From NCBI GenBank assembly GCA_964252035.1, contig OZ176201.1: a stretch of 64,000 nt of DNA, one strand, 5' to 3'. Each line of letters starts with the position of its first letter. Position 1 is the first letter of the stretch. This document shows, piece after piece, positions 9,755-63,081 of this stretch. The translations under genes and the position numbers were made by a program. Below the pieces are notes generated by a model that was given only the letters and a program-made list of their open reading frames with translations, had not been told where the DNA came from and did not search any database. This stretch comes from Podarcis erhardii. Lineage: Eukaryota.

Positions 9755-10839
9755 GCCAAATTTGCATTTATTTTGTTCTCTATTACATTAACGAAAGATA
9801 AAATAAAAATAAAAGCCATAGCTACCAGCAGTTTGTTTTCTGGATGTGATTTCTCTGTGGCTTTGAACAGTCCCAGGGCTAGAAGACATTCATCTCCATG
9901 AGGTCCTAATGAAATCCAGCTAGTCACAATGTCTTTTGATAGCCTTGACACTCTTCCCTCTGTCAGTTGCTGTATGAATTATTTGTTGTTTCTGAGCAAG
10001 TCTTATGAGCGTCCCTCTGTGAGACACACAGCTTCCCAGAGCTGGAAATATTTTGTGGCTCTCTTTCATCATAGTGTTATTCACATCCGACTCATAAGAC
10101 GTCAGGGACGGCATTTTCTGATATCACAGAATTGTTTCGTGTTGCTTGCTCTGGAACTCTTAATGACAAACAGATTCATTCAGGGTGTGTGCACATTACT
10201 ACCTTAAGAGCAGAGTGAAGTTGTTTTTTTCAATCTGTTTCACAGCCCATCTGCCCGTCCACCCACCTCCCCCCCCCCACCATCTGGTTACATCAACATG
10301 GCTTCATTAGTGTCGGATTCATTTCTGTTTATGCACCTGCCATGGGGCATTGACAGGGTGATGATATATTTACAATGGTGTTCACACCTTGGCTAAAGAC
10401 AAATTAGGAACAGCTTACAGACTTCAGTCGGTGTGAAGCTGGTTTGAGAAACACATCAAATGGTAGAATCTTATTAAAAAGCAGAGGATACATATGCATT
10501 TTGGATAAGGTTGTGTGAACATGGATTAAAGACCCAGCATTAGAAACACAGTGAGTGCACAGTAAACAGGTCTGTGAACACATCCTCATAATCTAGAATA
10601 GTAAATTTGTGCATTTACACTTGTAGCCAGCAAAAGGTAGTTGTGCAAGTACGTATCTCCATGATTTGTAGCAGCTCCACAAGAGTTTCCACTTCCCTCT
10701 TGTTTTAACAATAGCAACAATATAATGGGTTTCTGCCACCATGACAAGCCTTTTAAATTAAATTGATAAAATTAAGCAAGTTTGGGAGAAAACCAGTAAT
10801 GGAGTTCTCTGTGAAAGAGCAGCAGGCTTAGTTCTGGTA

Positions 10840-11065
10840 CAGTGGTACCTCGGGTTAAGAACTTAATTCGTTCTGGAGGTCCGTTCTTAACCTGAAACTG
10901 TTCTTAACCTGAGATACCACTTTAGCTAATGGGGCCTCCCGCCGCCACCACACCACCGCCACACATTTTCTGTTCTCATCCTGAAGCAAAGTTCTAAACC
11001 CGAAGTACTATTTCTGGGTTAGCGGAGTCTGTAACCTGAAGCGTCTGTAACCTGAGGTACCAGTG
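10840..11065. mobile_element. Tc1/mariner (pogo/Tigger-like) MITE
   Basis: TIRs cagtggtacctc/gaggtaccagtg flanked by TA on both sides. Confidence 0.85.
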
Positions 11066-11127
11066 TACTGAGAACATATTATCTCAGAGGTGCCAGGTCC
11101 CACACTGCCCTCCAAGTCCCCATAAGT

Positions 11128-11263
11128 CAGGCATAGGCAAAATTGGCCCTCCAGATGTTTTGGGACTACAACTCCCATGATCCCCAGCTAACAGGACCAG
11201 TGGTCAGGGATGATGGGAATTGTAGTCCCAAAACATCTGGAGGGCCAAGTTTGCCTACGCCTG
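11128..11263. mobile_element. hAT MITE with perfect 8-bp TSD
   Basis: TIRs caggcataggcaaa/tttgcctacgcctg; TSD ccataagt at 11120-11127 and 11264-11271. Confidence 0.9.
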
Positions 11264-12212
11264 CCATAAGTCATAAGTTCTGGTTAGTAGACTTAAAGTT
11301 CTAGTAAAAAGGCAAATAGATCTCACATGCCTGAAGTGTGAATTTTGAAGGATAGCTGTGTTTTGGTCTGCATATTGTTTCAAGTTCAAGTTTGATGGAT
11401 TCACCTTTAAATGTGAACTGAATTAGATTTCTCCTCCATCACTAAGGTATCATTTGTGTTCTTTAACTAGTATTGGGAGCCATTGCCCACTCCTATGAAC
11501 TGCTATGTGAATGCCCATCTCCTGAGCCCTGGGCTATAACAGATTATAAACATGCAGTTTTAAAACCAACTTATTTTTTTGCTACTTGTTTGGTGTCTGC
11601 TGAGACATTAGCAGGAAGGTTTCAGAAAGTAAGTTATGGTCTGCATGCAATGCACGGCGGGAATTCCTCTCCTCTCCTGCCTCTCTTACCCGTGAAAGTT
11701 TCTGCTATTATAAATTTGATGGAGTCTTTAAGGTGTCATGGGACTCTTTATTGCTTTTGCTGAAGCAAAACAACAACCCCCCCACTCCCCGGAAACTGTA
11801 GCAATTTGTAGTTTTCCTTGAGCTTTCTCAAAGACCTTAGTCATTCCCCTAAGGAGCTGAAGACTTATCTTCACTTGCAGTTCCTCAAAGCCATTTTGAA
11901 ATGTGTCTGCGCTGCTGGGCTAATTCACTGACAATCTCTATGTGTATTTTAAAATCTCATCCTAGAGTGACAATGAGTGAGCAGCCCACAGGGCAAAATC
12001 AGCTTGTCTTTGAAATTTTCCATAGGCAAATGCAGGGGTGAGCATTCAGGCAGTAGTAGGCAGTAGCTGCAGATTGTCCATTTCTTAGCAATGAACCCTC
12101 TGAGAATTTCTTTTAGATGAATTCTCTCAATTTTCCTATCATTTTCATCACCGGGGCTGTAGTCATATGGCTCCTTAGTTTACCTAGATGTAGGCCTCAT
12201 AGAAGACAGTGG

Positions 12213-12450: not shown

Positions 12451-13258
12451 GACATAGCATAAAATGCAGGATTTGTGATATGTGCTTCAGAACTCTTTTT
12501 ATTATTTTCCTGCATCTACTACATATTTTGGAAAGCTGTTTGTCCATTTAATATGCATTTGGACACCTCAGAACAGATCGTAAGCAAATTTGTTTTGTTT
12601 TTGTAAGTCACTTTGGGTTCACCTTTCTGAAAAAAGCAACTAAATAAGTAAATAAATAGAATAATAATTTTGCATTATGGTTCCTGAAATCAAGGAGCAA
12701 GAATCCATCTATGCTTGGGTGCAATTGGACTCCATTTTGAATCAAGATGGTGGATCAAACCTTTCAAAACTACACTGATCTTTACCACTGATTCCAAAAC
12801 TGCATTGATTTTTTGGTCTTAGAATTCCCAAACAACACTAGGTACAAGGCTGCTAGTGTTTTATATATGCAATTTATAATACAAACATACCCATTTACTA
12901 TTCATCTTTTTCTTGTTATCTATATTACATATCTAAGAGAAACAATAGCTCCATAAAAGTAGAAATATAGAAATCAACACTGTAATATGAATCATACATC
13001 TATTTTGTAACATGAACCAAAACAGAATCAGTTCAAATGCTGAATGGGAACTAAACTTATATTGACCTGAACATCCAAACTGCTAAACTCAAAGTGGAAC
13101 TGAGCTACAATATTTAGCAATGCTTTTCACTGGGGGGATATCCATTAGTACATTGTGCCACTTCTAATCTTTTGTGACTGCAAACAAAGGAAACAAAGTA
13201 TCCCCAAAGTTTATTACCAGAAAACTCAACCAATTCCCTAGTAACATTCTATATATAT

Positions 13259-14046
13259 TGTCACAGCCACCCAGGTGGGTCCCAGCTCACGAGAGACCTT
13301 ACTCCGTTATAGTTTACTTACAGGAAAAGTTTATTGAAGATAATTGCTTCTTTCACAGTTCAGCATTGTGGCTGTACGTCTGTCACGTTAGACCGCCGAA
13401 GTCCCCCTCTGACTCCTCCCCTCCTCCACACCAACTTAATAGCCTGGCTCTAGACCACCTCTTCCTCTCCTTTCTTTTCCGCAGGGTCTTTCTGCCCCCC
13501 TGGGTTCTCTCTTTCCGGGATTCGCCTGAGGCTGAATCCTCTGCCGCCTCCTGCCCCCTCCTTCTGGCTTTGGGGCCGGGCTCCTCCTCTGAGCTTTCCC
13601 CACTTCCGCGCGCCTCTATGTTTGAACTTGGCGCGCGTACGTTGCTTTTGACCTTTCCTTCGTCCTCTATACTGCCCCCTGTTCCACTCTCTACCCTTTC
13701 CGGCTGAACACCTTGCTCCAACCCCCTCTCTCTATTTTCTCCTGTTCCTCCTCCCTCCGAGAGGCTGACAACTCCACCCCCTTTACTCCGTTCCGGCTGA
13801 GACCCCTCTGACAGCGTCTGTGCTTCACTGGGCTTTCTCCCCTCCTTCCCTGACTTTTCACAGCTTCTCTCTTCTCCTGCTTTTCGCCTGATCATGCTAG
13901 CTCCCTTTTGGGAATCCTCTGACTCACTGCTTAGGCTCATAGATTCCCTTCGAATTCCGTCATCTTCTTCCTCGTCTCTCTCTCCCTCCTCCCACTCGCT
14001 TTCCGTCTCCTCTGCCATCTCCTCACTTCTCCCAGAAACCCTGACA
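13259..14046 (-). repeat. 3' LTR (788 bp)
   Basis: Direct repeat of 19010-19797 with no difference found by eye; AATAAA on - strand at 13335-13330. Confidence 0.97.
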
Positions 14047-14486
14047 TCCATCCCCCCCTCGAAGCCCCCCCTTCCCCCCTCCCGGTCGCTGGGTGCAGGT
14101 TGAGGGAAATGTGGTTCTTCCTGGGTCGGTTCAGGATACCGGGTGTCCACGTCAATCTTCTCCTCTGGCAGCTCCGTATACGTGTGTTCGAACTCGGGTT
14201 CCCCCCCTGAAGGCATCACAGTCTCTTCCTCCCTCACTGCTTCTCCTGGCGCTGCCTGCCAAGGACCTATCATCCACCTCTGACTCCATACCTCCCTTGG
14301 CTGATCCACCCACCAATAAGGGTTTGTCTCTCCCCCCCCCCAGGCGGGGAACCCTGGTCGGGCTTGTTTTGGGCGTAGAGCCCTCGGGCGAGGAGAAACC
14401 CCCGAACGTGCTGCCCGACAAAGTGGGCGTGAAAAGCCAATCATCAAAATACTCCTCGGGCATGGGTTTGTGCGGAAAAATTGCAT
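13383..14486 (-). CDS. Extra ORF / Pol-tail frame spanning the pol 3' end, PPT and U3: acidic low-complexity protein ending in a basic patch
   Basis: 367-codon open frame; E/D/S/G-rich; RKTLRKRKERKR near the C-terminus; TGA at 13385-13383. Expression is not demonstrated. Confidence 0.6.
   Translation of the reverse strand: MQFFRTNPCPRSILMIGFSRPLCRAARSGVSPRPRALRPKQARPGFPAWGGGETNPYWWVDQPREVWSQRWMIGPWQAAPGEAVREEETVMPSGGEPEFEHTYTELPEEKIDVDTRYPEPTQEEPHFPQPAPSDREGGRGGFEGGMDVRVSGRSEEMAEETESEWEEGERDEEEDDGIRRESMSLSSESEDSQKGASMIRRKAGEERSCEKSGKEGRKPSEAQTLSEGSQPERSKGGGVVSLSEGGGTGENRERGLEQGVQPERVESGTGGSIEDEGKVKSNVRAPSSNIEARGSGESSEEEPGPKARRRGQEAAEDSASGESRKERTQGGRKTLRKRKERKRWSRARLLSWCGGGEESEGDFGGLT
14047..14060 (-). 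other. Polypurine tract
   Basis: GAGGGGGGGATGGA on - strand directly abuts the TG of the 3' LTR. Confidence 0.85.
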
Positions 14487-17400
14487 GAAACTCCTCCTTC
14501 AACAGGGGTTCGTCCAAAGCGTAATCCGGCACCCAGCTATTTGCAGAGACTGGAGTGCCTTCCCTGGCGAGAAAATATTCAACTCCCTCCTCCCCCCATC
14601 GTGAATCCAGTATCTCTGTGACCTCATTAAGAGGTTCTGGTCTTGGCGACTCCCCTCTCTCAGGCGCCCTTCTACGTGGCTCTGGAGGTGCTCCTGACTC
14701 TTGAAACCTGTGTGGGGCTTTGTAGGGAGTGAGCACCGACCTATGAAAGACCGGGTGCACCCTGGAGCCCTCCGGAAGGGCTAGGCGAAAAGCCACCGGA
14801 TTGATCTTAGCCTCAACTTGATATGGTCCTAGCTGCCTGTGTTCTAACTTCTTTTTGGCCAACGACCTGGCCGGCATCGCGTGGGCTGCTAACCATACCC
14901 AGTCCCCAACCTGAATGTCTTCCCCCACCCTTCTGTGTTTGTCGGCTTGCACCTTATACGCCTGCTTTGCCAGCTCCAAATGTCTCCGCAGCTCCTCGTG
15001 CACCTCTTGCAACTCTGCTGCAAACTGGTCGGCATTTTGAGGTCCCCCCCCTTCAGGTGCTGTAAAGCTCGGGAAGGTTCTGGGATGACGTCCATAGTTC
15101 GCGAAGAAAGGCGTCACCCCGGTGGATGCGTGCTTCGTGTTGTTGTAGGCGAACTCAGCCATCGGCAGGTAGTCCACCCACGCCGCGGGTCGCTGGTTGG
15201 CGTAACACCGTAGGTACTGCTGCATGATCGCGTTGACCCTCTCCGCTTGACCGTTGGTCTGTGGATGCCTCGCCGACGTCAGGTTGATCTTGACGTGTAA
15301 GATACCCAGAAGCTTCCGCCAGAAAGTGGAAACAAATTGGCGCCCCCTGTCGGACAAGACGGACTGCGGTAGTCCATGCACTCTGAAGACGTGATCGATG
15401 AAGAGCTTTGCGGTCTGTTCTGCCGTCGCCACCTTGGCACAAGGAATGAAGTGCGCCATCTTGGTGAACAAGTCCACAACCACTAACACCGCCGTCTTAC
15501 CTCTGGAGCTGGGCAGGTCTGTAACAAAGTCCAACGCTACCCTCTCCCACGGTTGCTGCGGTGTCTCCAGCGGTTCTAACAATCCCGCCTGCTTCTGATG
15601 CACTGGTTTGGACCTCTGGCAGATATCGCACCTGGCTACGTAGTCCGCCACCTCTCCTCTCATCTGGGGCCACCAAAAGTCCCTTGCCACCAACTCCATC
15701 GTCTTCTCTTTGCCGAAATGGCCCGCACTCGGGGCATCGTGCAATTGTTGCAAAACCGTGGCGCGAAGCTCGTCGGTGGGCACGTAAAGGGCGCCCTTGC
15801 GAGTCAAAAGTCCATCCTGCAACTGAAACTCATTGTTGTCAGGCGACCCTCTGCGGAGCTCCTCCATCTTGGATTGTGCAAACTGATCCTCTTGCAGCGC
15901 GCGTCGCACCGCGTCCAGGTCGACTGCGATGGTAGCGCACGTCCACGCCTGCGGTGCGAAAATGTACTTTGCTGCGATTGGAGCTACTTCCTCCAGGTAT
16001 TGAGGCTTTCGGGACAGCGCGTCTGCTATAACATTGGAGTCTCCAGGGATGTATTCTATTTTGAAATCGAAATCCGCAAAGAATTCCGCCCAGCGCATGT
16101 GTCGTTGGGTTTGCAATTTAGCCGTCCGCCAATACTCCAAGTTCTTGTGATCCGTGCGGACCTGCACCGTGTGCTTGGCTCCTATCAAGAAGTGTCGCCA
16201 CGCTCTGAAAGCTGCATGAATGGCCAACAACTCCCTGTCCCATATGGTGTAGTTGCGCTCCGTCTTGCTGAGCTTGCGGGAGTAGAATGCACCCGGTCTC
16301 CAGTTGCCTTGCGAATCCTCTTGCAAGAGGACGGCCCCAACTGCTCTGTCTGATGCATCTGTCTCTACCCGCATGGGCCTGCCAGGATTCACGTGCAGCA
16401 GCTGCTCCTCGGAGGCGAAAAGGCTTTTAAGCTTCCGAAAGGATCGCTCTGCTTGTTCGGTCCAGACGAACTTCTTCTTCTTGGAACTGAGGGTGTCAGT
16501 GATTGCCGCCGTCGCGTTTGCAAAACCTTTAATAAACTTGCGATAAAAATTGGCAAAGCCGATGAACCTCTGGACCTCCTTCCGATTTCGAGGGCTCTTC
16601 CAGTCCAACAGCGCTTGGACTTTAGTCTTGTCCATGGCCAGTCCCTCGTCGGACAGCTTGTAGCCAAGGAAATCTACCTCTCTCACATCAAACTGGCACT
16701 TCTCCAACTTGGCGTACAGCCTGTGTTCCTTCAGCCTCTGCAGAACTTCCTTCACGTCCTTATCGTGATCCTCTGGCGATTCCGAGAAAATCAGGATATC
16801 GTCGAGAAAACAGACACACTTCTTGTAGAGGAGACCTGCCAGGACGTGATGCATGAATGCTTGGAAAACATGGCTGCCATTTTGTAGACCGAAGGGCATA
16901 ACCCTGTATTCGTACGTGCCCAAAGGAGTGAACATGGCCGTCTTCCACTCGTCGCCCTTCCTGATGCGGATGAGGTTGTAAGCTCCACGTAAATCCAGCT
17001 TGGTAAAAATCTTCCCCCTCCTGACTGTAGCCAAAAGGTCGTCAATTTTGGGCATGGGGAAAGCCTTGGGCTTAGTTAGTCTGTTTATGAACCGGTAGTC
17101 CACAATGAGCCTCTTCTGGGGCGTGTCTTTCTTTTTCACAAAGAAAACAGGACTGCCTCCCGCTGCTTTAGATTCCTGGATGAATCCGCGCTTGAGGTTG
17201 TGTTCTATGAACTCCCGAAGCTCTTGCAGCTCGTCTTCCGACATGGAGTACAGCTTGGCAGTTGGCAACTGCGCGCCTGGCACTAAGTCAATCGCGCAGT
17301 CGTAAGGTCTGTGAGGCGGCAATTTGTCAGCTTCCTTTTCGCAGAAAACCTCCAAGAACTCCGCGTACTTGTGAGGAACCGCTTGCACCATACTCAGATG

Positions 17401-17931
17401 CCGCTGCTGTTCGTCTTCTCCTCCTTGATCGGTTTGGATGCAATTCTGGGCGCAATACGATGAACAAAAGGTGATCTGCCTCTGGTACCAAGCAACCGCG
17501 GGACTGTGCCTGTCCAGCCAACTCATGCCCAACACGATGGGCGTGTCCGATAAGTGGGTGACATTGAAACTAATAAGCTCTCGATGGTCTCCAATTTGCA
17601 TCATCATGGGAGGGGTTTGCTGCACCACTTGCCCCCCCAGCAACTTCCTGCCGTCTACCGTGACCACGTTCAGAGGCGTCGTTGCAGGCAGGAGCGCTAT
17701 GTTATGCTGCTTGACGAACTGTAATCCCACGAAATCGGCGTTGCTTCCCGAATCGATGGTTGTTGGAACCTCGAGAAGCCGCCCATCAGGCAGCTGGAGT
17801 GTTGCTGTGAGTAAAACTGCTGGTTTGGGAGGTAAAGGGTCCATGTGCTGCAAGGATGCTGGGGACTTCTCTACAGATCCGCCTGGCTGAGCCCCAGTAG
17901 CTCTGCTTCCAGCCAGGCACTGCAGTTTCCC
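14152..17931 (-). CDS. Pol (protease-RT-RNase H-integrase-chromodomain), reached from gag by a -1 frameshift
   Basis: IDSGS protease; KLDLRGAY and FLDDILIF RT; TDASD, RELLAI and TDHKNL RNase H; HDAPSAGH...CDIC, LDFVT, SDRG, ERVN and GPY integrase; C-terminal chromodomain fold. The ORF-track start at 18048 lies upstream of the slippery site. Confidence 0.95.
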   Translation of the reverse strand, partial: GKLQCLAGSRATGAQPGGSVEKSPASLQHMDPLPPKPAVLLTATLQLPDGRLLEVPTTIDSGSNADFVGLQFVKQHNIALLPATTPLNVVTVDGRKLLGGQVVQQTPPMMMQIGDHRELISFNVTHLSDTPIVLGMSWLDRHSPAVAWYQRQITFCSSYCAQNCIQTDQGGEDEQQRHLSMVQAVPHKYAEFLEVFCEKEADKLPPHRPYDCAIDLVPGAQLPTAKLYSMSEDELQELREFIEHNLKRGFIQESKAAGGSPVFFVKKKDTPQKRLIVDYRFINRLTKPKAFPMPKIDDLLATVRRGKIFTKLDLRGAYNLIRIRKGDEWKTAMFTPLGTYEYRVMPFGLQNGSHVFQAFMHHVLAGLLYKKCVCFLDDILIFSESPEDHDKDVKEVLQRLKEHRLYAKLEKCQFDVREVDFLGYKLSDEGLAMDKTKVQALLDWKSPRNRKEVQRFIGFANFYRKFIKGFANATAAITDTLSSKKKKFVWTEQAERSFRKLKSLFASEEQLLHVNPGRPMRVETDASDRAVGAVLLQEDSQGNWRPGAFYSRKLSKTERNYTIWDRELLAIHAAFRAWRHFLIGAKHTVQVRTDHKNLEYWRTAKLQTQRHMRWAEFFADFDFKIEYIPGDSNVIADALSRKPQYLEEVAPIAAKYIFAPQAWTCATIAVDLDAVRRALQEDQFAQSKMEELRRGSPDNNEFQLQDGLLTRKGALYVPTDELRATVLQQLHDAPSAGHFGKEKTMELVARDFWWPQMRGEVADYVARCDICQRSKPVHQKQAGLLEPLETPQQPWERVALDFVTDLPSSRGKTAVLVVVDLFTKMAHFIPCAKVATAEQTAKLFIDHVFRVHGLPQSVLSDRGRQFVSTFWRKLLGILHVKINLTSARHPQTNGQAERVNAIMQQYLRCYANQRPAAWVDYLPMAEFAYNNTKHASTGVTPFFANYGRHPRTFPSFTAPEGGGPQNADQFAAELQEVHEELRRHLELAKQAYKVQADKHRRVGEDIQVGDWVWLAAHAMPARSLAKKKLEHRQLGPYQVEAKINPVAFRLALPEGSRVHPVFHRSVLTPYKAPHRFQESGAPPEPRRRAPERGESPRPEPLNEVTEILDSRWGEEGVEYFLAREGTPVSANSWVPDYALDEPLLKEEFHAIFPHKPMPEEYFDDWLFTPTLSGSTFGGFSSPEGSTPKTSPTRVPRLGGGRDKPLLVGGSAKGGMESEVDDRSLAGSARRSSEGGRDCDAFRGGTRVRTHVYGAARGED

Positions 17932-18947
17932 TGAAGCTGCTCCTCTGATTGCACCTCTGCTGTCACAGTTGCTAGTGCTGCAGTGTGCTTCTGGAGCCTC
18001 TGGGGGCACTCTTTCGCCATATGGTGTGCACTGTCGCAGATGTAACACTTCCTGGTCCCTCTAGGAGGCTTCGCTTTGGCTGCAGCAGGGATGGGGCTCT
18101 GGGATGGCTTTTGAGCCCTAGCACCACCAATCTCCATTGGCTCCTCGCCTTCCTTCCCCATTGGTGAGGGGTGCGCACGGCTGAAATCCCTGTGCACAAA
18201 AGGGAGAGCTTTTGCTTGCGCGCGCGCTTGGGGCCCCCCCTCCTCGTGCCACGGACGTCCCTCATGTCGAATTCCTATAGCCAAAGCCCGTTGCACCACG
18301 TCTTCCAGGGTCTGGGGTCTGTCCCCCCTTGCGATCTCATCCTTGACGGAGGGGCTCAATCCCTCCCAAAAAAGATCCCTGACCGGTAGACTGTCCTTCG
18401 GCCAATCTAAGGCGGTGAGCAATGCAAAAAATTTAGAATGATATTGGCGTACAGTGGCTCTCCCCTGCCTCAGCCCGTGCATCTGCCGGCGCGCAATGTC
18501 CTTATCCACAGAGGATTGAAAACAAGCATCCATTGCCTTGATAAACGCATCTGCATTGCGACGGGCTGGTCCATCTTCGCGCCACAGATTGCGTAGCCAA
18601 GCCCTGGCCTCCCCATGCAGGTGCGAAACAATAAATCCCACTCTCTCCTCCTCATCTCTAAAATCATGACGGAGTAAATGCAGTGCATACACGACATCTG
18701 CCCTGAAGTTGGGATAGTCTTGCAAGTTGCCATTAAAATGCGAAACTAGGGCACCCCCCCTCCTTCCAAGCGCAATGCCCTCCGCTCTGGAGCCCGGGGT
18801 CCCCGCCTTGTCCGCATTTTCCCACCTTGCTTGCAAATCCTGGCACGCTTTCTCCAAGTCAGCATTCTTCTTCTGCGAAGCAATGACTGCCGTTGTGAGA
18901 GTGGTAATCTGATCCCGGAGTGCAGCCAGCTGTTCCTCAGCACTCAT
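17871..18947 (-). CDS. Gag (N-terminal coiled coil, retrotransposon gag domain, CCHC zinc knuckle)
   Basis: 358-aa intact ORF starting 62 nt after the 5' LTR; CYICDSAHHMAKEC = Cx2Cx4Hx4C. Confidence 0.95.
   Translation of the reverse strand: MSAEEQLAALRDQITTLTTAVIASQKKNADLEKACQDLQARWENADKAGTPGSRAEGIALGRRGGALVSHFNGNLQDYPNFRADVVYALHLLRHDFRDEEERVGFIVSHLHGEARAWLRNLWREDGPARRNADAFIKAMDACFQSSVDKDIARRQMHGLRQGRATVRQYHSKFFALLTALDWPKDSLPVRDLFWEGLSPSVKDEIARGDRPQTLEDVVQRALAIGIRHEGRPWHEEGGPQARAQAKALPFVHRDFSRAHPSPMGKEGEEPMEIGGARAQKPSQSPIPAAAKAKPPRGTRKCYICDSAHHMAKECPQRLQKHTAALATVTAEVQSEEQLQGNCSAWLEAELLGLSQADL
17881..17931 (-). promoter_or_regulatory. -1 ribosomal frameshift signal: G GGA AAC heptamer, 6-nt spacer, 9-bp stem
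   Basis: GGGAAAC at 17931-17925 in the gag frame (CAG GGA AAC); GCCTGGCTG (17918-17910) pairs with CAGCCAGGC (17889-17881). Confidence 0.85.
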
Positions 18948-18996
18948 GGCTGCCCCGTTCGTGAGCTTCGCAAAAAAAAATTTTTGCTTTCAGAGG

Positions 18997-19007
18997 GAGG
19001 GGGACTT
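18997..19007 (-). other. Self-priming primer-binding site (not tRNA type)
   Basis: AAGTCCCCCTC, 2 nt after the LTR end, is the exact reverse complement of GAGGGGGACTT at 19160-19150; no TGG-type tRNA PBS. Confidence 0.85.
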
Positions 19008-19009
19008 TC

Positions 19010-19797
19010 TGTCACAGCCACCCAGGTGGGTCCCAGCTCACGAGAGACCTTACTCCGTTATAGTTTACTTACAGGAAAAGTTTATTGAAGATAATTGCTT
19101 CTTTCACAGTTCAGCATTGTGGCTGTACGTCTGTCACGTTAGACCGCCGAAGTCCCCCTCTGACTCCTCCCCTCCTCCACACCAACTTAATAGCCTGGCT
19201 CTAGACCACCTCTTCCTCTCCTTTCTTTTCCGCAGGGTCTTTCTGCCCCCCTGGGTTCTCTCTTTCCGGGATTCGCCTGAGGCTGAATCCTCTGCCGCCT
19301 CCTGCCCCCTCCTTCTGGCTTTGGGGCCGGGCTCCTCCTCTGAGCTTTCCCCACTTCCGCGCGCCTCTATGTTTGAACTTGGCGCGCGTACGTTGCTTTT
19401 GACCTTTCCTTCGTCCTCTATACTGCCCCCTGTTCCACTCTCTACCCTTTCCGGCTGAACACCTTGCTCCAACCCCCTCTCTCTATTTTCTCCTGTTCCT
19501 CCTCCCTCCGAGAGGCTGACAACTCCACCCCCTTTACTCCGTTCCGGCTGAGACCCCTCTGACAGCGTCTGTGCTTCACTGGGCTTTCTCCCCTCCTTCC
19601 CTGACTTTTCACAGCTTCTCTCTTCTCCTGCTTTTCGCCTGATCATGCTAGCTCCCTTTTGGGAATCCTCTGACTCACTGCTTAGGCTCATAGATTCCCT
19701 TCGAATTCCGTCATCTTCTTCCTCGTCTCTCTCTCCCTCCTCCCACTCGCTTTCCGTCTCCTCTGCCATCTCCTCACTTCTCCCAGAAACCCTGACA
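19010..19797 (-). repeat. 5' LTR (788 bp)
   Basis: Direct repeat of 13259-14046; contains TATA-like box, Inr and AATAAA (19086-19081) on - strand. Confidence 0.97.
19158..19192 (-). promoter_or_regulatory. LTR core promoter: TATTAA plus Inr, predicted TSS at A19161
   Basis: TATTAA at 19192-19187; GTCAGA fits the BBCABW Inr with A+1 31 nt downstream of the first T. Confidence 0.7.
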
Positions 19798-19946
19798 TAT
19801 ATGATACAGGCTTTCAATAAAAGCAAAATACTTTTCATCTGTCATTTTGAGTTGCTGTAAAAACCTAGTCCTGTAGTGCCACTTAGAGGATAGATCTAGT
19901 AACTGTGAACAAACCTTTTGTGATATGCTGCTATTCACTGCAACTA

Positions 19947-20188
19947 CAGTGGTACCTCGGGTTACATACACTTCAGGTTACAGACGCTTCAGGTTACAGA
20001 CTCTGCTAACCCAGAAATAGTACCTCGGCTTAAGAACTTTGCTTCAGGATGAGAACAGAAATTGTGCTCTGGCAGAGCGGCAGCAGCAGGAGGCCCCATT
20101 AGCTAAAGTGGTACCTCAGGTTAAGAACAGTTTCAGGTTAAGAACGGACCTCCGGAACGAATTAAGTACTTAACCTGAGGTACCACTG
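19947..20188. mobile_element. Tc1/mariner-type MITE (same family as 10840, opposite orientation)
   Basis: TA-cagtggtacctc...gaggtaccactg-TA. Confidence 0.88.
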
Positions 20189-21162
20189 TATTTCATTGTG
20201 TGAAACATTCAGTAAGCTAACTTGCTAGTTGTGACAGCTCATTGGATTTCATCTCAAGTTAGTGTATGTAAACAATCTTATTTTTAAGGTGTTCAGGCAA
20301 TTGCTGGGTTGAATTCTCCATGGCAAATGATTCTCATTGTAGATCCTTGTTTCTCCACTCCTGCCTTCCAACTTGATTTGGACAGCTCAGAATGAGCTGT
20401 TCCTTTGCTCTAAAGAACAAAGCCCTTCTTAAAGGTTGGTGCAGGCAAACAAGGCCTGTGGGTTTAGATTTGCTTTATTAATACTGATGTTGGGTTAGAC
20501 TTGTATGCACTCAATTACTATGTAAGAAAACATGTGTATGGTCACGTTACCATCTTTCATGGGGGGGGCATACAGAGAAGTCTCCTTGAACCTGTAGTAG
20601 CCTCTGGTTCTGACAGCCACTACAAGCAGCAGCAGTTGTAAATCCATCTCCCAGCTTTTGCCTCATCCCATGCTCCTAGAAAGGAAGGCGAACATCCCTA
20701 TCCACTCTACCTTGTAGCAACACCTCACTTTTTATTGCCAGAAAAATAAACAAGGAAATTGCTGCTGTTTCATTATATTCATTTGATGATTTGTGTCTGA
20801 GATCAAAATAAACTGTTGAACAGGTTATATACTGGCTCTTGAGATGGTTTAGAGGTACAAAGGAATAGGCCAGTAGGGAACAGCATGGTGGAGTGCAGCC
20901 ACACCTCCGGTCAGGTGTGTGGCTGCTGCTTACTGGGAGGTAACGGGGTGAGGAATCAGCGAGACTGGTGTGCAGCAACCAGTAGAGCCAGTTTGGTGCT
21001 CCAGTTAGGGTGTGTGTACCATGCCAATCTCCCCACCAACCTCCCCCTCCTGGTAAGCAGCAGCGCCACAACTCACTGTCAAGTGAGCAGTGGCCCTTCA
21101 CCATGCCATCCACTACTGGACTCAGGGTACAACATTTCATATTTAGGATGTTTAATCTAGGC

Positions 21163-22802: not shown

Positions 22803-23239
22803 TGCTGCTGGAAGGGTAAGTCCGCGTTAAATAGGAAAGAGAAAGCGAGCGGGGCATGTTGAGGTCCAAGCTGCCATAGAGAAGCCTGGCGATCCCCTAC
22901 CCCACTCCAAACACCGGGCAGAGTGCTGCCCTCACATGTTTTTCTAAGAAGCCGGGGGCGGGGGGGGGGCTGATTCAGCTAAAATCCCGGTCGGGGGTGG
23001 GGCTTGCGGGGTCCATTCCGCCCCTCCTCCCCACATGCTGAGCACCGCAGAGGCGGGCAACGCTTCACCTTTTGGCTCTCCCTCGCGGCGCCAGGCCCGG
23101 GTGCCTGGAGCGAGCGAAGGCAGCCCTCCGCCCCCTCGCCGCCCTTCGCCTCCTCCCCTGGCGCGCCCTCCTCTTCCTTTCCCTTCCCTCCCGAGGGGGC
23201 GGTGCGGACGCTGCTCGCCCCTCCCACCCCGGCTTGGCC

Positions 23240-23381
23240 CGCTCTGCAGCCGCCGCCGCCGCCGCCGCCGCTTGCTCGCTGCCTCCTGAATTTCTTCCGG
23301 CGGGCTTTGGCGCGCCTCTCGGACTGGAGCCGGCGCGGACGTGCGGGAGGCAGCCGTGGAGCGGGGCGCGCAGCGGGCGCC
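23240..23381 (+). other. SFXN1: Probable non-coding exon 1 of SFXN1 (start approximate)
   Basis: Donor GCC|GTGAGT at 23381/23382 inside the CpG island; no ATG in the segment; exon 2 has only 13 nt before its ATG. Confidence 0.65.
23249..23269 (+). repeat. (GCC)7 repeat
   Basis: Seen directly. Confidence 0.95.
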
Positions 23382-24099
23382 GTGAGTAACCCTGGGCAGC
23401 AACCAGAAGCACCTCTCTCTCCCCATCCCTGGCCGCTCGGGAGGTAGGCGCTCCTTCCACGGCGCTTCACCCAGCCAGCAGCCCCAAAGTGGGGGGTGAC
23501 CCTCCCCGCTCTCCATCCCCCGAAGCGGGTGCAGGGAGGGAGGCCGGCTTGGCGCCCCGCAGCTGCTGCTGCTGCGGCTCTGCAGAGGACGGAGAGCTAC
23601 GCCTCCCTTTCTCCCCGGTGCCCGTCTCTCGAGCGCGCTAGCGGCATCCTCTTCCCCCGGGGTGCATCTGCCTACAACAGTAGCCTCTCCCCCAAAATAC
23701 AATACATAGGAACCAAGGTCCCTTCGGCCTCCCAATAAAATATTTGAGTGCCCCCCCCCGCGGTTGATGGGCATTTCCACTCCAACGGTACGCGTGCGCC
23801 GTGTCTTGTGATCGATGATGCGGGGCGGGGCATACATGGGCCCCCCAATATTTTATTCAAGTTGGCACCCTTGATGCAATGTGGCATCGCAATGCCCATT
23901 TAGCTAACCCACTCCAGCATTCCTGTCCTCCTGTATACCGTGGGCCCAGTGAATAACCCAAAATGTCCCTTTCGGGTATGTGTGCGTTCCCAGTAGATGG
24001 ATCTAAAAGTATTGGTTTAGTTTTTTAAAAAAGAATAAATAAGAGAAAGAGACGTTCGTTTGGGTACTGAGCGCTTTCTCCCTTCTTCCAGCTGCCTGA

Positions 24100-47735: not shown

Positions 47736-48415
47736 AATCATCAACATTTCACTGTAATTTCAGTATGCCTGACATACCTACTTCATTGCTACTACTTATC
47801 TTTTCATGTATGGTAAACCAATTTTAATGTCACAGTGAAGACCCATTTGTACTGGTATCAATAGATCTACCTCTGTACTCAACAAAATTGTTAGCCAGCA
47901 TAGACCCTGGCCTTTGTCCATGTTCAAAATAATACACAATCAGTGAGTGTTGTCCTACCAATGTGGTAGTAACTTTATATGATAACTATTGTCTAGATGT
48001 GTTAGACACAACATAGAATTGAAACATGCCATACAGCCGAGTCTTGTTTAGCTGCAGGTGATGTTCATCTTCGAACTGAAAGGAGGAGATCTAATGCTTG
48101 ATCTGAACGTTTTGCTTTGAAAGACCCACCAACAGTGGGATTTGCAGAGTAAAGTCTGTGGTTTTCAAGCTGTTTTCTGGGAAGGCCTGGGGTTGCTTAG
48201 AAGCTTATCATGACTTTCTCAGTGAAAGGATCAATAAGAGGAGACAAGCTTTCCTGAAAGGCAGCTTAGCAAGCACTACCAGTCTTCCCTACAGCAAGAA
48301 TGAAAGCATCTGGTATATTGTAAATTTCACTCTCAGCTCATATGGGACATTAATGAGAAGGTCAACAGGCCTGGCTGAAGCCCCAGATGAACTAAGCTGA
48401 CTGTGTACTCTATAC

Positions 48416-48691
48416 CAGTGTTTCCCCAGCTTGGGTCTCCAGCCGGTTTGGGGCTACAACTCCCATTATCCCTTGCTAGCAAGACCAGTAGTCAGGGATG
48501 ATGGGAATTGTGGTCCAAAAGCAGCTGGAGACCCAAGTTGGGGAACTACTGCTCTAGAACAAGGGTGGCTAATGCTTGGTTCGCCAGATGTTGCTGGACT
48601 ACAGTTACCATCATCCTTGACCATTGTTGCTGCTGGCTGGAGCTGCTGGGAGTTGGATATCAGCAACACATGCAGACGTTACTCACCCATG
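48416..48691. mobile_element. Two hAT MITEs in tandem (48416-48551 and 48560-48691)
   Basis: Separated only by the 8-mer ctctagaa; the left flank is ctctatac. Confidence 0.75.
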
Positions 48692-49964: not shown

Positions 49965-51343
49965 GTCGTATGCCTAGGAAAACTGCCAAATTATATTTCT
50001 ACATTTGGAAAATGATTCTGGATTACATTGTGACCGAAGAACATTTTTGATGTTAGTATTAACACAATGTCTTGCCAGTGTTGATGGAATTTATTGTGGT
50101 ATTTTAAAAGTATGCTGGATGAAATATTAAAAGCAGTGACTGGCATGAATGGTGGTGGTCTCTGTTTGAAACAAACTTTAGGAGGGCAATGTTTATGCTC
50201 ACAGGGATATTCTTGTGTATGGGTAAGCTACTTTACATTAGATGGTTTCTTCCAACCAGATACAAACTAAGTGTAAACAAAAAAAAAGTGTATTGCATGC
50301 CTGAGAATGAATTGTAGTTTCCCCCTTAATGGTTTCAGCAGAAAAATTATCAAATCTCTGCTTGTGTAAAAGTTTTAAGTGGACAAGAGGCAATTTATAT
50401 AACACGCAAGTACAATAACATCCATTTTTCCATCTGTACTCCTTAATTGGAGGTGGGGATTCATTTTGATTCCAGACTCCTGGCCCAGTTCAAAATTCCA
50501 ATCTCTTCTATAGGAGCTTCAAAAGTGGAGTGTTCTCTCTCTGCATTTCCAGAACGTTGTTGCTTTTAGGTGGGATTCAATCACATACCAGCAAATTCGA
50601 GTGGTGCAGTTCCAGTTGACTGGCAGGCCTTGCACAAGAAGCCCGCTTCCCCAAAGGACTGGGCTTTTTTCCAATAAGAAAAGTAATAGGAAGATGCACT
50701 GTGAAATATGGGATAGCATTTCCTTGACACAACTTCATCTAGCCTCCCCACAAACAAATCAGGATGAATGCTCCATAAACAAGTCATCTGGGCATGTGTA
50801 TCTCTCCCACCCCAGCACACTCCCCTGAATGCCAGAAACACATTATTTTACCTAAAACAAAGCAAATGAAGATAATGGGTCAGGGTGCAACTCATCTGTT
50901 TGCCAACATCAGCTTAGAGCAGAGGAATCGCTAGCCTTGACAATCACTTTCTCTCCGCTGTGGGAGAAGGAGGACTACAAAACAAAGCCCCCTGCACTTT
51001 TTACTTATTAAACCTACTTTCAAATCCATTTTTCCTCCCATTGAGGGGTGAGGGGGGGAAATCAATTTCTTCTGCTCACAAGTCACAGTGGGAATGAATG
51101 CAGTCTCTGGGAAGAGAAGGAACTAGGGCAGGAAGAAAAGTGTCATGGTGTGATATTTCATGAATATAGTGCAGCACTTCTGTGTTCCTGCAGGCAAGCT
51201 ATGGGAGGTGGAGAAGCAGGGGAGGGGATAAAGAGACAAGAGGGGTCACTTTTCCTGCTTATTTTTTATTTGTGCAGACCCATTGTAAGTCACAAATCTT
51301 TGGTGAAACTTACTATTTCAGGCTTGTTATGTGGAATACAGTA

Positions 51344-51558
51344 CAGTGGTACCTCGGGTTAAGTACCAATTTGTTTCGGAGGTCCTTTCTTAACCTGAAA
51401 CTGTTCTTAACCTGAAGCACCACTTTAGCTAATGGGGCCTCCTGCTGCTGCCATGCCGCCGGAGCATGATTTCTGTTCTCATCCTGAAGCAAAGTTCTTA
51501 ACCTGAGATACTATTTCTGGCTTAGCGGAGTCTGTAACCTGAAGCAATGTAACCTGAG
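51344..51558. mobile_element. Tc1/mariner-type MITE with its right TIR cut off by BovB
   Basis: TA-cagtggtacctc...gtaacctgaggt, then BovB tail. Confidence 0.85.
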
Positions 51559-51947
51559 GTTTTGTTTGTTTAGTTGTTCAATCGTGTCCGACTCTTCGTG
51601 ACCCCATGGACCAGAGCACGCCAGGCACTCCTGTCTTCCACTGCCTCCCGCAGTTTGGTCAAACTCGTGCTGGTAGCTTCAAGAACACTGTCCAACCATC
51701 TCATCCTCTGTCGTCCCCTTCTCCTTGTGCCCTCCATCTTTCCCAACATCAGGGTCTTTTCCAGGGAGTCTTCTCTTCTAATGAGATGGCCAAAGTACTG
51801 GAGCCTCAGCTTCAGGATCTGTCCTTCCAGTGAGCACTCAGGGCTGATTTCCTTAAGAATGGATAGGTTTGATCTTCTTGCAGTCCATGGGACTCTCAAG
51901 AGTCTCCTCCAGCACCATAAATCAAAAGCATCAATTCTTCGGCGATC
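51559..51947 (-). mobile_element. BovB (RTE clade) LINE 3' end
   Basis: RRIDAFDLWCWRRLLRVPWTARRSN...RWLDSV...AWRALVHGVTKSRTRLNN* is the BovB RT C-terminus; (AAAC)n-type tail. Confidence 0.92.
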
Positions 51948-51959
51948 TTCTTCAGTAAG

Positions 51960-51976
51960 GGCACTAGGTGGCAGCA
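51960..51976 (+). promoter_or_regulatory. Candidate CTCF site
   Basis: GGCACTAGGTGGCAGCA resembles the CTCF core; motif match only. Confidence 0.4.
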
Positions 51977-52670
51977 CCTCCCCTTTCCGGTTTTCTGTTA
52001 TAAGGAAATAACACTCCAAGTGTTCATCACTGCTCTCTTTGGAGGACCAAATCTCATGCTCACCCAATATGTGAATCCAAGAAGCTTCGTGGAAAAATGG
52101 GTACTGCAGACCCACCCCCACGAGGTAGTATGAAACTTACATATGGATGCAAGCTTAATTCATTTAATTTTATCCCCTGCATTTTGAGAGGATGGAATTG
52201 TGCGAAATAGTCCTCTGCATGTACTGATGTATATGTGTGGTAACTGCACCACATTCCTTCCTTCCTTCATATTTAGTTCACTTTTCCACACACAAAAACC
52301 ATGCTGAAGTGGCATACAATGAAGAAAGCAGTAATACATTTTAAACGATAAAACATAAAAACTCTTGCATAACAATATAGCGAAACAATAACATGGTAAC
52401 AATTTCCTACTAATATTGCAAAACAAATACAATAACATACAAACAACCACAATTCAATACTGTAACGTTAACTAGATCACTTAAGCAACATGCAGCAACC
52501 CATAGCAAAAACAACAAAGGCGCTTCACCGTTTCAGGTTAGTCCTGGAAACGGGGGAGGGGGGTAGCTTTTTTCATCCTTGAAAATTACATACAGCTGAA
52601 AGGAAGTTGAGAGATTAATACATGTCCCACTTATTCTTTCAGCTTTTCAAGACTTAGTTTAATTCTACTA

Positions 52671-52896
52671 CAGTGGTACCTCGGGTCAAGTACTTAATTC
52701 GTTCCAGAGATCCGTACTTAACCTGAAACTGTTCTAAACCTGAAGCACCACTTTAGATAATGGGGCCTCCTGCTGCTGCCGCACCGCTGGAGCATGATTT
52801 CTGTTCTCATCCTGAAGCAAAGTTCTTAACCTGAAGCACTATTTCTGGGTTAGTGGAGTCTGTAACCTGAAGCGTATGTAACCCAAGGTACCACTG
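52671..52896. mobile_element. Tc1/mariner-type MITE
   Basis: TA-cagtggtacctcgg...ccaaggtaccactg-TA. Confidence 0.88.
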
Positions 52897-54048
52897 TAGA
52901 TCTTAACATCTATGCAGCTTCCTTAGAAAACTCAGCTATAGGTGTGAAACTTTCTGTCTTTTGGGGGGTGGCTGACCTAGGGGAGGCAGACAGCAGTGAC
53001 CAAAGAAGAGGGTGCCCACAGAACCTGCTCAAAAATCAAAATGTGCTCACATACCTGAAAAGGTTGACAAGCCTTTTTCTGTACCATACATGGAAGGCTG
53101 AGGAAGCAGGGAGCCTGGAAAATCATTTTCTTCTGAAGGAAAAAAATATTTGATGAAGAGGAAGATTTAGAGCCCACTTTACTGTACCTTAAGGAAACCT
53201 CAGTTCAGCAAAAACAGGCATGTATGTACTACAGGCTCATGCTGTTTAGCCCCTTTGAACAATACTAAACCTGAGTCTGAAGACATTTTTCAGCATCATC
53301 TGGTCTTCTGTGAGAACAGAATTATATAAAATGCAGATGATCATTGGGGGATAGATTAGATTCTCATGCAAAGCTTCTCATCATGCTCAGGGCTCCCAAA
53401 ACCAGATCTTACCTTCAACTGTTGCCATGCAAGCAACTGCCCTTCCTGTGTGCCAGGCCTGAAGCGGGCATACAGAGAAAGGCTCATCCTATATGGCATA
53501 GAAACTTCATAACAAAGACAATAACTGACTTGGGTCATTACCATTTTAAACTGTGCATACTGACCAAAAAATTAGAAGCTTTCCCCCTGAGAGTCATTTT
53601 CAGTTTTCTCTCCCATTAGTTTGATTTTCTATTTCTTTATCGTTTCCAAAATTACAATAGCCATTTCCTCAAAGGGCAAATGATTTAATTTAATAGCATT
53701 ACAGAAACATCTCTGACACTGCATTAACAAGCACAGTGATTCACAAGGCTGTGTTTGATGTTCACCAGATGGAGAAATGACCTGCTTGACAACGTACGCA
53801 ATCCAGCCAATCTGCATTTGCATGACTTTATTGAGGTGATATTCTGACTAATAAGAATAAGAAATAATGGTGACACCTATGAGAAATATGTTCCTCTAGG
53901 GGCGGCTCAAACTGTTTGCATTGCCCACAAATGCAGCCTACCAGCCACTACCAAATGCTTTGCCAACCCCCCCCCCCACATCTGGCCAAGCTCTCTCCCT
54001 TCACACCTTGCCCCACCAAAAAACCCCTTCCTTTACACTACCCCAACC

Positions 54049-55820: not shown

Positions 55821-56130
55821 GGGGAAAATCCATAGCTAAATGGTAGAGCTTCTGTCTTAAAAGTAGAAGACCCCACGTTCAAGCTCTAGTGCAGGCATAG
55901 GCAAACTCGGCCCTCCAGATGTTTAAGGACTACAATTCCCATCACCCCTGACCACTGGTCCTGTTAGCTAGGGATCATGGGAGTTGTAGTCCCTAAATAT
56001 ATGGAGGGCTGGGTTTGCCTATGCCTGCTCTAGTATCTCCAGATAGGGCCACGGGAGACTGCTGTCTGAAACCCTGGAGAGCAGCTGTCAGTCAGAGTAG
56101 ACAAATCCCAGACCAATGGTTTGATTTGCT
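55821..56130 (+). mobile_element. Squam3-like SINE interrupted by a hAT MITE (55892-56027)
   Basis: MITE TIRs caggcataggcaaac/gtttgcctatgcctg; TSD ctctagtg/ctctagta. Confidence 0.8.
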
Positions 56131-62833: not shown

Positions 62834-63081
62834 CAGTGTTTCCCAAACTTGGGTCTCCATCTGTATTCAAACTACAATTCCCATCATTCCTGACCACTGG
62901 TTTTGCCAGCTATGGATGATGGGAGTTGTAGTCCAAAAAACAGCTGGAGACTCAAGTTTGAAGAACACTGCTCTAAAGCAAGTCTGGAGAATGTATGGCC
63001 TTCAATCTCCTATCAACCACACCCAGCATGGCCAATGGTCTGGGATGATGGGTGCTATAGTCCAATGGCACCCCTACCCTG
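62834..63081. mobile_element. Two hAT MITEs in tandem (62834-62970 and 62979-63081)
   Basis: ctctaaag-MITE-ctctaaag-MITE-ctctaagg. Confidence 0.8.

What the first reader, a model, noticed from the sequence alone, without database searches (positions are those of the whole stretch)
18997..19192. Complete tRNA-independent self-priming architecture readable from sequence
Seen: no TGG PBS. TATTAA and an Inr place +1 at A19161; nucleotides +2 to +12 (GAGGGGGACUU) are exactly complementary to the 11 nt starting 2 nt after the LTR (AAGUCCCCCUC). An 8-bp helix (19126-19119 with 19021-19014) and a small ACGU hairpin (19127-19139) would bring the 5' end next to the PBS; an A/U hairpin follows at ~18970-18987. 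Established: fission-yeast Tf1 primes with the first 11 nt of its own RNA after RNase H cleavage, and this was proposed for the vertebrate Tf1/sushi group. Three independent signals agree here.
Basis: partly seen in the sequence, partly recalled or inferred. Interest (0 to 1): 0.7.

Follow-up and report, generated by a model that had tools for sequence, protein, structure and literature searches.

The report
Self-priming signature in a sushi-type retrotransposon
An intact, freshly inserted sushi/PEG10-type LTR retrotransposon has, in place of a tRNA-binding site, an 11-base site that pairs exactly with the predicted first bases of its own RNA; this Tf1-style self-priming layout is real, but the mechanism is already known for this group.

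Summary
The element lies on the minus strand at 13259-19797. It has identical 788-bp LTRs, a TATAT target duplication, and gag, a -1 frameshift and pol.

GAGGGGGACTT (19160-19150) is the exact complement of AAGTCCCCCTC (19007-18997), which starts 2 nt after the LTR. No TGG follows the LTR. The only TATA-like box in the LTR sits 32 nt upstream of the primer, and the only AATAAA sits 75 nt downstream of its start.

The complement alone is weaker evidence than it looks. The LTR is G/A-rich and the leader C/T-rich, so P is about 0.03 in shuffles.

The decisive support is comparative. Pol relatives fetched from metagenomes carry the same layout: TATA at -32 to -34, a 10-12-nt primer, a 1-2-nt spacer and a PBS. 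Their sequences differ, and some pairs show compensatory changes.

No RNA data could be obtained, so the transcription start and RNase H cleavage remain inferred.

Self-priming is established for Tf1 and was proposed for vertebrate Tf1/sushi elements, so this is a new member of a known kind. First readers noted the same signature on several other pieces of this genome; those notes are unchecked.

The parts
13259..19797 (-). Complete Ty3/gypsy (sushi/PEG10-type) LTR retrotransposon, 6539 bp, flanked by the 5-bp target duplication TATAT (13254-13258 and 19798-19802)
19010..19797 (-). 5' LTR, 788 bp, TGTCA...TGACA. Predicted U3 is 19797-19162, R about 19161-19060, U5 about 19060-19010
   Evidence: the U3/R/U5 limits are inferred from the TATA box, the primer and AATAAA
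13259..14046 (-). 3' LTR, 100% identical to the 5' LTR. It carries the second copy of the primer sequence at 13409-13399
19187..19192 (-). TATTAA, the only TATA-like box in the LTR; its first T lies 32 nt upstream of the first paired base of the primer
19150..19161 (-). Predicted transcript start (A19161 or G19160) followed by the 11-nt self-primer GAGGGGGACTT (19160-19150)
   Evidence: the TSS itself is inferred
19127..19139 (-). Small hairpin (ACGU stem, 5-nt loop) between the primer and the inner helix
19119..19126 (-). 5' arm (ACAGCCAC) of the 8-bp inner helix
19081..19086 (-). AATAAA, the only poly(A) signal in the LTR; it places the end of R roughly 15-25 nt further on
19014..19021 (-). 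3' arm (GTGGCTGT) of the inner helix; it ends 6 nt before the PBS, in a position like the retroviral U5-IR stem
19008..19009 (-). 2-nt spacer GA between the LTR end and the PBS
   Evidence: the same GA spacer occurs in relative L003
18997..19007 (-). Primer-binding site AAGTCCCCCTC, the exact complement of 19160-19150; no TGG
18969..18986 (-). A/U hairpin in the leader; role unknown
17871..18947 (-). gag (358 aa). Pfam: Ty3_capsid and Retrotrans_gag. The closest solved chain is PEG10
17925..17931 (-). GGGAAAC slippery heptamer in the gag/pol -1 overlap; the same heptamer as in PEG10
   Evidence: PMC2800197
14152..18048 (-). pol frame (1298 aa): protease, RT, RNase H, integrase, Tf2-type SH3 domain and a weak chromodomain-like tail
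14047..14060 (-). Polypurine tract GAGGGGGGGATGGA abutting the 3' LTR

Best explanation
The element primes its own minus-strand DNA synthesis in the way Tf1 does.

1. Pol II starts about 31 nt after TATTAA, at A19161 or G19160.
2. The first 11-12 nt of the RNA fold back over R-U5 and pair with the 11-nt PBS, which lies 2 nt beyond the LTR. An inner 8-bp U5 helix helps bring the two ends together.
3. The element's RNase H cuts the RNA just after the paired stretch.
4. The freed 3' OH primes synthesis of minus-strand strong-stop DNA through U5 and R.
5. The strong-stop DNA transfers to the 3' R, which ends after AATAAA.
6. Plus-strand synthesis starts at the G-rich PPT.

Shown here: the anatomy, the fold, and conservation of the layout with covariation in relatives. 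Inferred: the TSS, the cleavage, and the priming itself.
For: Anatomy of the window element:
- The 11-bp complement is exact, and no TGG follows the LTR.
- The primer begins 32 nt after the only TATA-like box and 75 nt before the only AATAAA.
- The primer:PBS helix is in the MFE and centroid structures, with pair probability 0.95.
- The inner 8-bp helix has P of about 0.011.
- The element is of the right kind. Pfam finds PR-RT-RH-IN and SH3_Tf2-1. The gag is closest to PEG10. It has the GGGAAAC -1 frameshift site.

Relatives found through pol:
- L003: TATA at -32, an 11-nt primer, LTR end GTGACA, spacer GA, then the PBS.
- L005: TATA at -33, 12 bp, GTGACA plus GT.
- L006: TATA at -32; the 3' LTR copy is a perfect 11-nt complement of the PBS.
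- Family B (L032, L028, L053, L074): 10-11 bp with TATA at -33/-34. One pair reads C-G, U:G and U-A in three copies, and another shows a T-A to A-T swap.
- Family A (19 loci): 13 bp with a bulge. L010 has three pairs changed on both sides; 6 of 500 shuffles reached this and none of the slid controls did.
- In L003 and L032 only the PBS, out of 1520 and 5227 internal 11-mers, has a complement in its own LTR.

Literature: the Tf1 mechanism is described in PMC7175516. Self-priming has been implicated in elements from fungi to vertebrates (PMC4600332; PMC6317226).
Against: - No RNA evidence for the TSS.
- Composition inflates the chance of a complement (P = 0.029).
- The whole-leader fold energy is ordinary (z = -1.7).
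- TATTAA is a weak TATA variant.
- If +1 is A19161, the primer is +2 to +12, not +1 to +11 as in Tf1.
- The PBS was not compared with host tRNAs. There are none in the window and no tRNA library was available.
- The relatives are distant (34-50% pol identity) and probably not vertebrate.
- The tree has no outgroup and carries a long-branch warning.
Confidence: 0.8

Rival explanations
1. Chance complement with no function. A G/A-rich LTR and a C/T-rich leader would match by composition alone, and the true primer would be something not recognised here.
For: 2.9% of composition-preserving shuffles give a complement of 11 nt or more. Several 8-nt G-rich complements to the leader occur elsewhere in U3. 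The fold z-score is only -1.7.
Against: The match sits at the TATA-predicted start, giving a joint chance of about 3e-4. The same layout, with unrelated sequences, recurs in every assessable relative. No tRNA-type PBS exists to take over the role.
Confidence: 0.05
2. Priming by a host RNA, such as an internal tRNA fragment or half-tRNA whose sequence happens to equal the R 5' end.
For: Half-tRNA PBSs exist in some LTR elements (PMC6317226). The PBS was not compared with host tRNAs here.
Against: There is no TGG. A tRNA-dictated PBS should be shared among families. Instead each relative has its own PBS, matched by its own LTR, and the two change together. Rfam finds nothing tRNA-like in the leader.
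Confidence: 0.06
3. The 5'-end:PBS helix is real and selected, but serves another purpose, such as packaging, dimerisation, or closing the leader for translation control. Priming would then occur otherwise.
For: Long-range leader helices have such roles in retroviruses; this is general knowledge and was not tested here. Nothing here shows cleavage or extension.
Against: The paired site sits exactly where a PBS must be, 1-2 nt after the LTR. Its length is held at 10-12 bp across lineages (13 bp with a bulge in family A), as in Tf1. No other candidate PBS exists.
Confidence: 0.08

Closest known systems
Tf1 / Tf2 of Schizosaccharomyces pombe (self-primed reverse transcription; Levin 1995, 1996; Lin & Levin 1997, 1998, as summarised in PMC7175516)
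   Same: No tRNA PBS. An 11-nt complement between the start of the RNA and the PBS. A helix in U5 next to the PBS. Ty3/gypsy gene order, with a Tf2-type SH3 domain in the integrase.
   Different: R-U5 is longer, with 152 nt from the predicted +1 to the PBS. A 2-nt spacer precedes the PBS. The primer may be +2 to +12. Cleavage and priming have not been shown.
Vertebrate Tf1/sushi group (sushi-ichi and relatives; Butler et al. 2001, J Mol Evol 52:260, cited in PMC4600332 and PMC6317226)
   Same: A vertebrate chromovirus-type element for which self-priming was proposed from the sequence. The gag is closest to PEG10, which derives from sushi-ichi-like elements (PMC4340606).
   Different: The Butler paper is not held in the library, so its primer/PBS sequences could not be compared. 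No reference sushi-ichi protein was available for a tree. This copy is intact with identical LTRs.
Tj1 of Schizosaccharomyces japonicus (PMC4600332)
   Same: Self-priming was inferred from a 5' LTR sequence complementary to the PBS, the same kind of evidence as here.
   Different: Tj1 was shown to transpose when its self-primer was fused to a promoter. [quoted passage not shown]
PEG10 (domesticated sushi-type gene of mammals)
   Same: gag similarity and the GGGAAAC -1 frameshift heptamer (PMC2800197).
   Different: PEG10 has no LTRs, PBS, RT or integrase and does not reverse-transcribe.
Ty3 (tRNA-iMet-primed Ty3/gypsy element)
   Same: The best solved match for pol (7q5b, E = 5e-141). Same gene order and a 5-bp TSD.
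   Different: Ty3 uses a tRNA primer with a TGG-type PBS; this element has none.

Membership tests
Ty3/gypsy (Metaviridae) LTR retrotransposon | LTRs with TG..CA ends, a short TSD, and gag followed by PR-RT-RH-IN in that order | tested here: met
   788-bp identical LTRs with TGTCA..TGACA ends and TSD TATAT. Pfam finds RVP_2, RVT_1, RT_RNaseH, Integrase_H2C2 and rve in order. Ty3 Gag-Pol matches at E = 5e-141.
Tf1/sushi group (chromoviruses) | Phylogenetic placement of RT/IN with Tf1, Tf2 and sushi-ichi | not testable with these tools
   No reference Tf1 or sushi-ichi sequences could be brought in. Proxies only: Pfam SH3_Tf2-1 at 59.5 bits, gag closest to PEG10, and the GGGAAAC frameshift site.
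Tf1/sushi group (chromoviruses) | Chromodomain at the integrase C-terminus | tested here: inconclusive
   Pfam Chromo scores E = 0.0057, 17 bits, below the 25.1-bit cut-off. The tail contains a chromodomain-like stretch (EILDSR ... SWVP) with degenerate aromatic positions.
Tf1-type self-priming elements | No PBS complementary to a tRNA 3' end (no TGG just after the LTR) | tested here: met
   The 30 nt after the LTR contain no TGG. No comparison with internal tRNA segments was possible.
Tf1-type self-priming elements | About 11 nt within the LTR, upstream of U5, complementary to the PBS | tested here: met
   19160-19150 versus 19007-18997, 11/11 Watson-Crick pairs. P = 0.029 for the complement alone.
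Tf1-type self-priming elements | The complementary stretch is the very 5' end of the transcript | not testable with these tools
   Prediction only: TATTAA lies at -32 from the first paired base. That spacing equals the -32 to -34 seen in L003, L005, L006 and family B.
Tf1-type self-priming elements | A leader RNA structure that holds primer and PBS together, including a U5-IR-like stem | tested here: met
   The MFE and centroid structures contain the outer helix, with bpp 0.95. The 8-bp inner helix ends 6 nt before the PBS (P = 0.011). Relatives have an analogous stem in L003 and in family A, where it shows one compensatory change. Family B has no long-range stem.
Tf1-type self-priming elements | Primer and PBS covary among related elements | tested here: met
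   Tested in pol relatives, not in copies of this same family. Family B has C-G, U:G and U-A at one pair and a T-A to A-T swap at another. Family A has three double changes. L003, L005 and L006 have different primers, each matched by its own PBS.
Tf1-type self-priming elements | RNase H cleavage of the RNA duplex after nt 11, followed by extension of the freed 3' end | not testable with these tools
   Requires biochemistry.

The most novel reading that the evidence does not exclude
This is a currently mobile self-priming element in a vertebrate-type genome. The common layout found here is: TATA at about -32, a 10-12-bp primer:PBS duplex (13 bp with a bulge in the most distant family), a 1-2-nt spacer after the LTR, and often a U5 stem beside the PBS. 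It is held across lineages whose pol proteins are only 34-50% identical. That would suggest the RT/RNase H measures the duplex like a ruler from the capped 5' end. It would be an RNA:RNA cleavage rule conserved between these distant lineages (and, if the metagenomic relatives are fungal, from fungi to vertebrates) that has been demonstrated only in fission yeast.
Probability: 0.35. Interest if true: 0.5.

Novelty: new member of a known kind. Interest (0 to 1): 0.3.

Why it matters
Self-primed reverse transcription has been shown experimentally only for Tf1, and functionally supported for Tj1, both in fission yeast. For vertebrate Tf1/sushi elements it rests on sequence inference alone.

This copy is intact, has identical LTRs, and has a clean readable architecture. 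It is therefore a good natural substrate for checking the start site, the cleavage and the strong-stop DNA in a vertebrate.

The comparison with relatives gives a simple, testable rule for annotating PBS-less chromoviruses: TATA at -32, an 11-bp duplex and a 2-nt spacer. It does not change what is known about the mechanism.

Tried and rejected
- Scans with the gag alignment of viral contigs and metagenome contigs found no relative.
- No other copy or solo LTR of this family lies in the window.
- The window contains no tRNA gene.
- Rfam finds nothing at gathering score in the window. In the leader it gives only a chance-level snoRNA hit at E = 0.07.
- The original Tf1 papers and the Esnault & Levin review are not held. 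The Tf1 facts are therefore taken from PMC7175516, PMC4600332 and PMC11042837.
- A ubiquitin-like match of pol residues 35-93 appears against poly-ubiquitin chains in the PDB. Pfam does not support it, and I treat it as a summed weak score.
- I considered using protein-database ORFs that run across the primer and PBS as a proxy for relatives' DNA. I dropped this because the best gag hit is only 74% identical, so LTRs would be too diverged to find.
- L062 and its group were not counted as self-priming. Their LTR boundary is not confirmed by a TSD, and a TGG lies 1 nt after the LTR.
- No pol search for named relatives and no large representative search were run. The family scans had already identified the protein.

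Full report
WHAT IS THERE

The finding lies in the 5' LTR and leader of a complete LTR retrotransposon on the minus strand, at 13259-19797 (6539 bp). The two LTRs are 788 bp long, 100% identical, and begin TGTCA and end TGACA. The element is flanked by a 5-bp duplication, TATAT.

Inside are gag (18947->17871, 358 aa; Pfam Ty3_capsid and Retrotrans_gag) and a pol frame (18048->14152, 1298 aa). Pol carries protease, RT, RNase H, integrase zinc and core domains, and the Tf2-type SH3 domain.

- Pol lies in the -1 frame relative to gag. The overlap holds the slippery heptamer GGGAAAC at 17931-17925. This is the same heptamer that PEG10 uses (PMC2800197).
- The closest solved chain for gag is PEG10. 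The closest for pol is Ty3 Gag-Pol.
- A chromodomain-like tail is present but scores below Pfam's cut-off.
- A G-rich polypurine tract abuts the 3' LTR.

This agrees with an earlier first-reader note on the same window (s1-232495).

CHECK OF THE OBSERVATION

All stated features are at the stated places.

- After the LTR come GA and then AAGTCCCCCTC (19007-18997). Its exact reverse complement GAGGGGGACTT lies at 19160-19150. The neighbours on both sides mismatch, so the duplex is exactly 11 bp.
- No TGG follows the LTR.
- TATTAA (19192-19187) is the only TATA-like hexamer in the LTR. Its first T lies 32 nt before the first paired base.
- AATAAA (19086-19081) is the only poly(A) signal.

Together these give U3 of about 636 nt, R of about 100 nt and U5 of about 50 nt.

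The 8-bp helix ACAGCCAC/GTGGCTGT (19126-19119 with 19021-19014) is the only 8-mer complement pair inside R-U5; 215 of 20000 shuffles did as well. Folding RNA from 19161 gives an MFE and a centroid structure that both contain the primer:PBS helix and the 8-bp helix. The MFE also contains the small ACGU hairpin and the A/U hairpin after the PBS. The pair probability of the outer helix is 0.95.

HOW MUCH IS CHANCE

Chance accounts for more than a naive count suggests. The LTR is 38% G and 32% A, and the leader is C/T-rich. As a result, 2.9% of dinucleotide-preserving shuffles of the LTR contain a complement of 11 nt or more to the first bases after the LTR. The fold energy of the leader as a whole is ordinary (z = -1.7).

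On the other side, only 2 of 4953 internal 11-mers have a complement in the LTR, and one of them is the PBS. The position of the match, at the TATA-predicted start, lowers the joint chance to about 3e-4 (my estimate).

COMPARATIVE EVIDENCE

The window holds no second copy. The closest gag relatives (59-74% identity) exist only as proteins from Logan contigs.

A scan of metagenome contigs with pol gave 79 loci at 34-46% identity; over the RT-IN core the best reaches 50%. Many of them are full elements. I defined LTRs by self-alignment, TG..CA ends and TSDs, without using the complement. None of the 17 loci with TSD-confirmed boundaries has a TGG-type PBS. Sixteen of the 17 have an exact LTR complement to the bases starting 1-2 nt after the LTR, with per-locus shuffle P of 0.077 or less. 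The 17th is L006, resolved below.

Lineage by lineage:

- L003. The LTR is TGTCA...GTGACA. TATAAAAA lies at -32. The primer is AAGGAGATCAA, the spacer GA, and the PBS TTGATCTCCTT, giving 11 Watson-Crick pairs. AATAAA lies downstream of the primer.
- L005. TATATAAG lies at -33. The primer is ATTCCGGTTCAA. The LTR ends GTGACA, followed by GT and the PBS, giving 12 pairs. L002 carries the same PBS.
- L006. This is an old copy with LTRs 91% identical. TATAAATA lies at -32. The 5' LTR primer carries two transitions, but the 3' LTR copy ACTCTCGTCAA is a perfect 11-nt complement of the PBS.
- Family B (L032, L028, L053, L074). The duplex is 10-11 pairs and starts 1-2 nt after the LTR, with TATAAG at -33/-34. 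One pair reads C-G in L032, U:G in L053 and U-A in L028. Another changes from T-A to A-T in L074.
- L025. Nine exact pairs, with no shuffle of 300 reaching this.
- Family A (19 loci). The duplex is 13 pairs with one bulged U. L010 differs from the others by three pairs changed on both sides. Only 6 of 500 column shuffles reach this, and none of the slid controls does.

RNAalifold on family A also finds a short stem made by the last bases of the LTR next to the PBS, with one compensatory change.

In L003 and L032 the PBS is the only internal 11-mer with a complement in its own LTR.

In a FastTree of the RT-IN core, the window element groups with family B and next to the L001-L006 clade. That tree has no outgroup and carries a long-branch warning, so I use it only to say that these are the nearest available relatives.

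MECHANISM

The best-supported reading is Tf1-type self-priming, with my confidence about 0.8.

1. Transcription starts at 19161 or 19160.
2. The first 11-12 nt fold back and pair with the PBS, helped by the U5 helix.
3. The element's RNase H cuts after the paired stretch.
4. The new 3' end primes strong-stop DNA through U5 and R.
5. The strong-stop DNA transfers to the 3' R.
6. The PPT primes the plus strand.

By analogy with retroviral replication, the plus-strand copy of the PBS would be templated by the primer itself. That would keep primer and PBS matched in new copies, and it fits the perfect match in this just-inserted element. This step is inference.

Steps shown here: the anatomy, the fold, and the conservation with covariation in relatives. 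Steps inferred: the TSS, the cleavage and the priming.

The Tf1 mechanism is described in PMC7175516: the first 11 bases pair with the PBS, and RNase H cleaves between bases 11 and 12. Retention of the PBS on Tf1 cDNA is described in PMC11042837.

RIVALS

- Chance, about 0.05.
- A host RNA or half-tRNA primer, about 0.06. This was not tested against host tRNAs, but it is contradicted by PBSs that differ from family to family and track their own LTRs.
- A selected helix with a non-priming role, about 0.08.

COMPARISON WITH WHAT IS KNOWN

Self-priming was demonstrated for Tf1. It has been inferred for Tj1, for fungal and plant Tcn1-like elements, and for vertebrate Tf1/sushi elements. The vertebrate case is Butler et al. 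2001, cited in PMC4600332 and PMC6317226.

The present element works like these and passes every membership feature that could be tested. Placement with reference Tf1 and sushi-ichi sequences, the TSS, and the cleavage could not be tested. It is therefore a new member of a known kind, not a new mechanism.

First readers of this scan noted the same kind of signature on at least six other pieces of this genome. Those notes are unchecked and are not used as support.

LIMITS AND RULES FOLLOWED

Copies were compared one by one. A cell-based mobilisation assay is named only under referred steps.

Noticed in passing
window 13383-14486 (-) and 19134-19838 (-): Long ORFs (367 and 234 aa) run through all of U3, the TATA box and the primer. 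U3 is 70% purine, which by itself removes stop codons. The 234-aa ORF has no Pfam match. This is the subject of another first-reader note (s1-232446).
   Followed up: partly
window 17925-17931 (-): GGGAAAC slippery heptamer in the gag/pol -1 overlap, identical to the PEG10 frameshift heptamer (PMC2800197).
   Followed up: partly
window 17770-17946 (-), pol residues 35-93: phmmer matches poly-ubiquitin chains of the PDB at E of about 1e-13, but no single stretch passes on its own, and Pfam finds no ubiquitin domain. This is probably a summed weak score. A UBL domain before the protease would be DDI1-like if it were real.
   Followed up: partly
window 19156-19163 with 18990-18997 (-): An alternative register exists: TCAGAGGG, which spans the predicted +1, is complementary to CCCTCTGA, which starts at the last base of the PBS and runs just beyond it. 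In the RNA this would be a 6-bp competitor to the 11-bp duplex.
   Followed up: no
window 14047-14060 and 19150-19160 (-): The PPT (GAGGGGGGGATGGA) and the self-primer (GAGGGGGACTT) share the core GAGGGGG. L003 also has a PPT and primer that both begin AAGG, but L006 does not. This may be composition only.
   Followed up: partly
L003:3504-3525, L005:4304-4327, L006:1090-1115 (approximate): In three related lineages the primers differ, but all end in TCAA and are followed by the same CACCAGT. This may be a conserved context for the RNase H cut. The window element does not share it.
   Followed up: no
L003 (whole contig): The contig is circularly permuted: rest of pol, one LTR, gag, then the start of pol. 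The same about 100 nt occur at both ends. It is probably a collapsed assembly of a multi-copy or tandem element.
   Followed up: partly
L062 and sisters (L058, L071): A TGG lies 1 nt after the putative LTR end, and the best LTR complement lies 414 nt upstream. This lineage may use a tRNA primer, but its LTR boundary is not confirmed by a TSD.
   Followed up: no
window 10828-11067, 19970-20190, 51331-51570, 52659-52898; also 11120-11264, 48408-48552, 55884-56028, 62826-62939: Two families of short interspersed repeats (about 115-240 nt, 62-91% alike, in both orientations). One copy lies about 170 nt from the retrotransposon's upstream end.
   Followed up: no
window 22944-23837 (-) and 51570-52121 (-): Further ORFs of 297 and 183 aa outside the element were not examined.
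   Followed up: no
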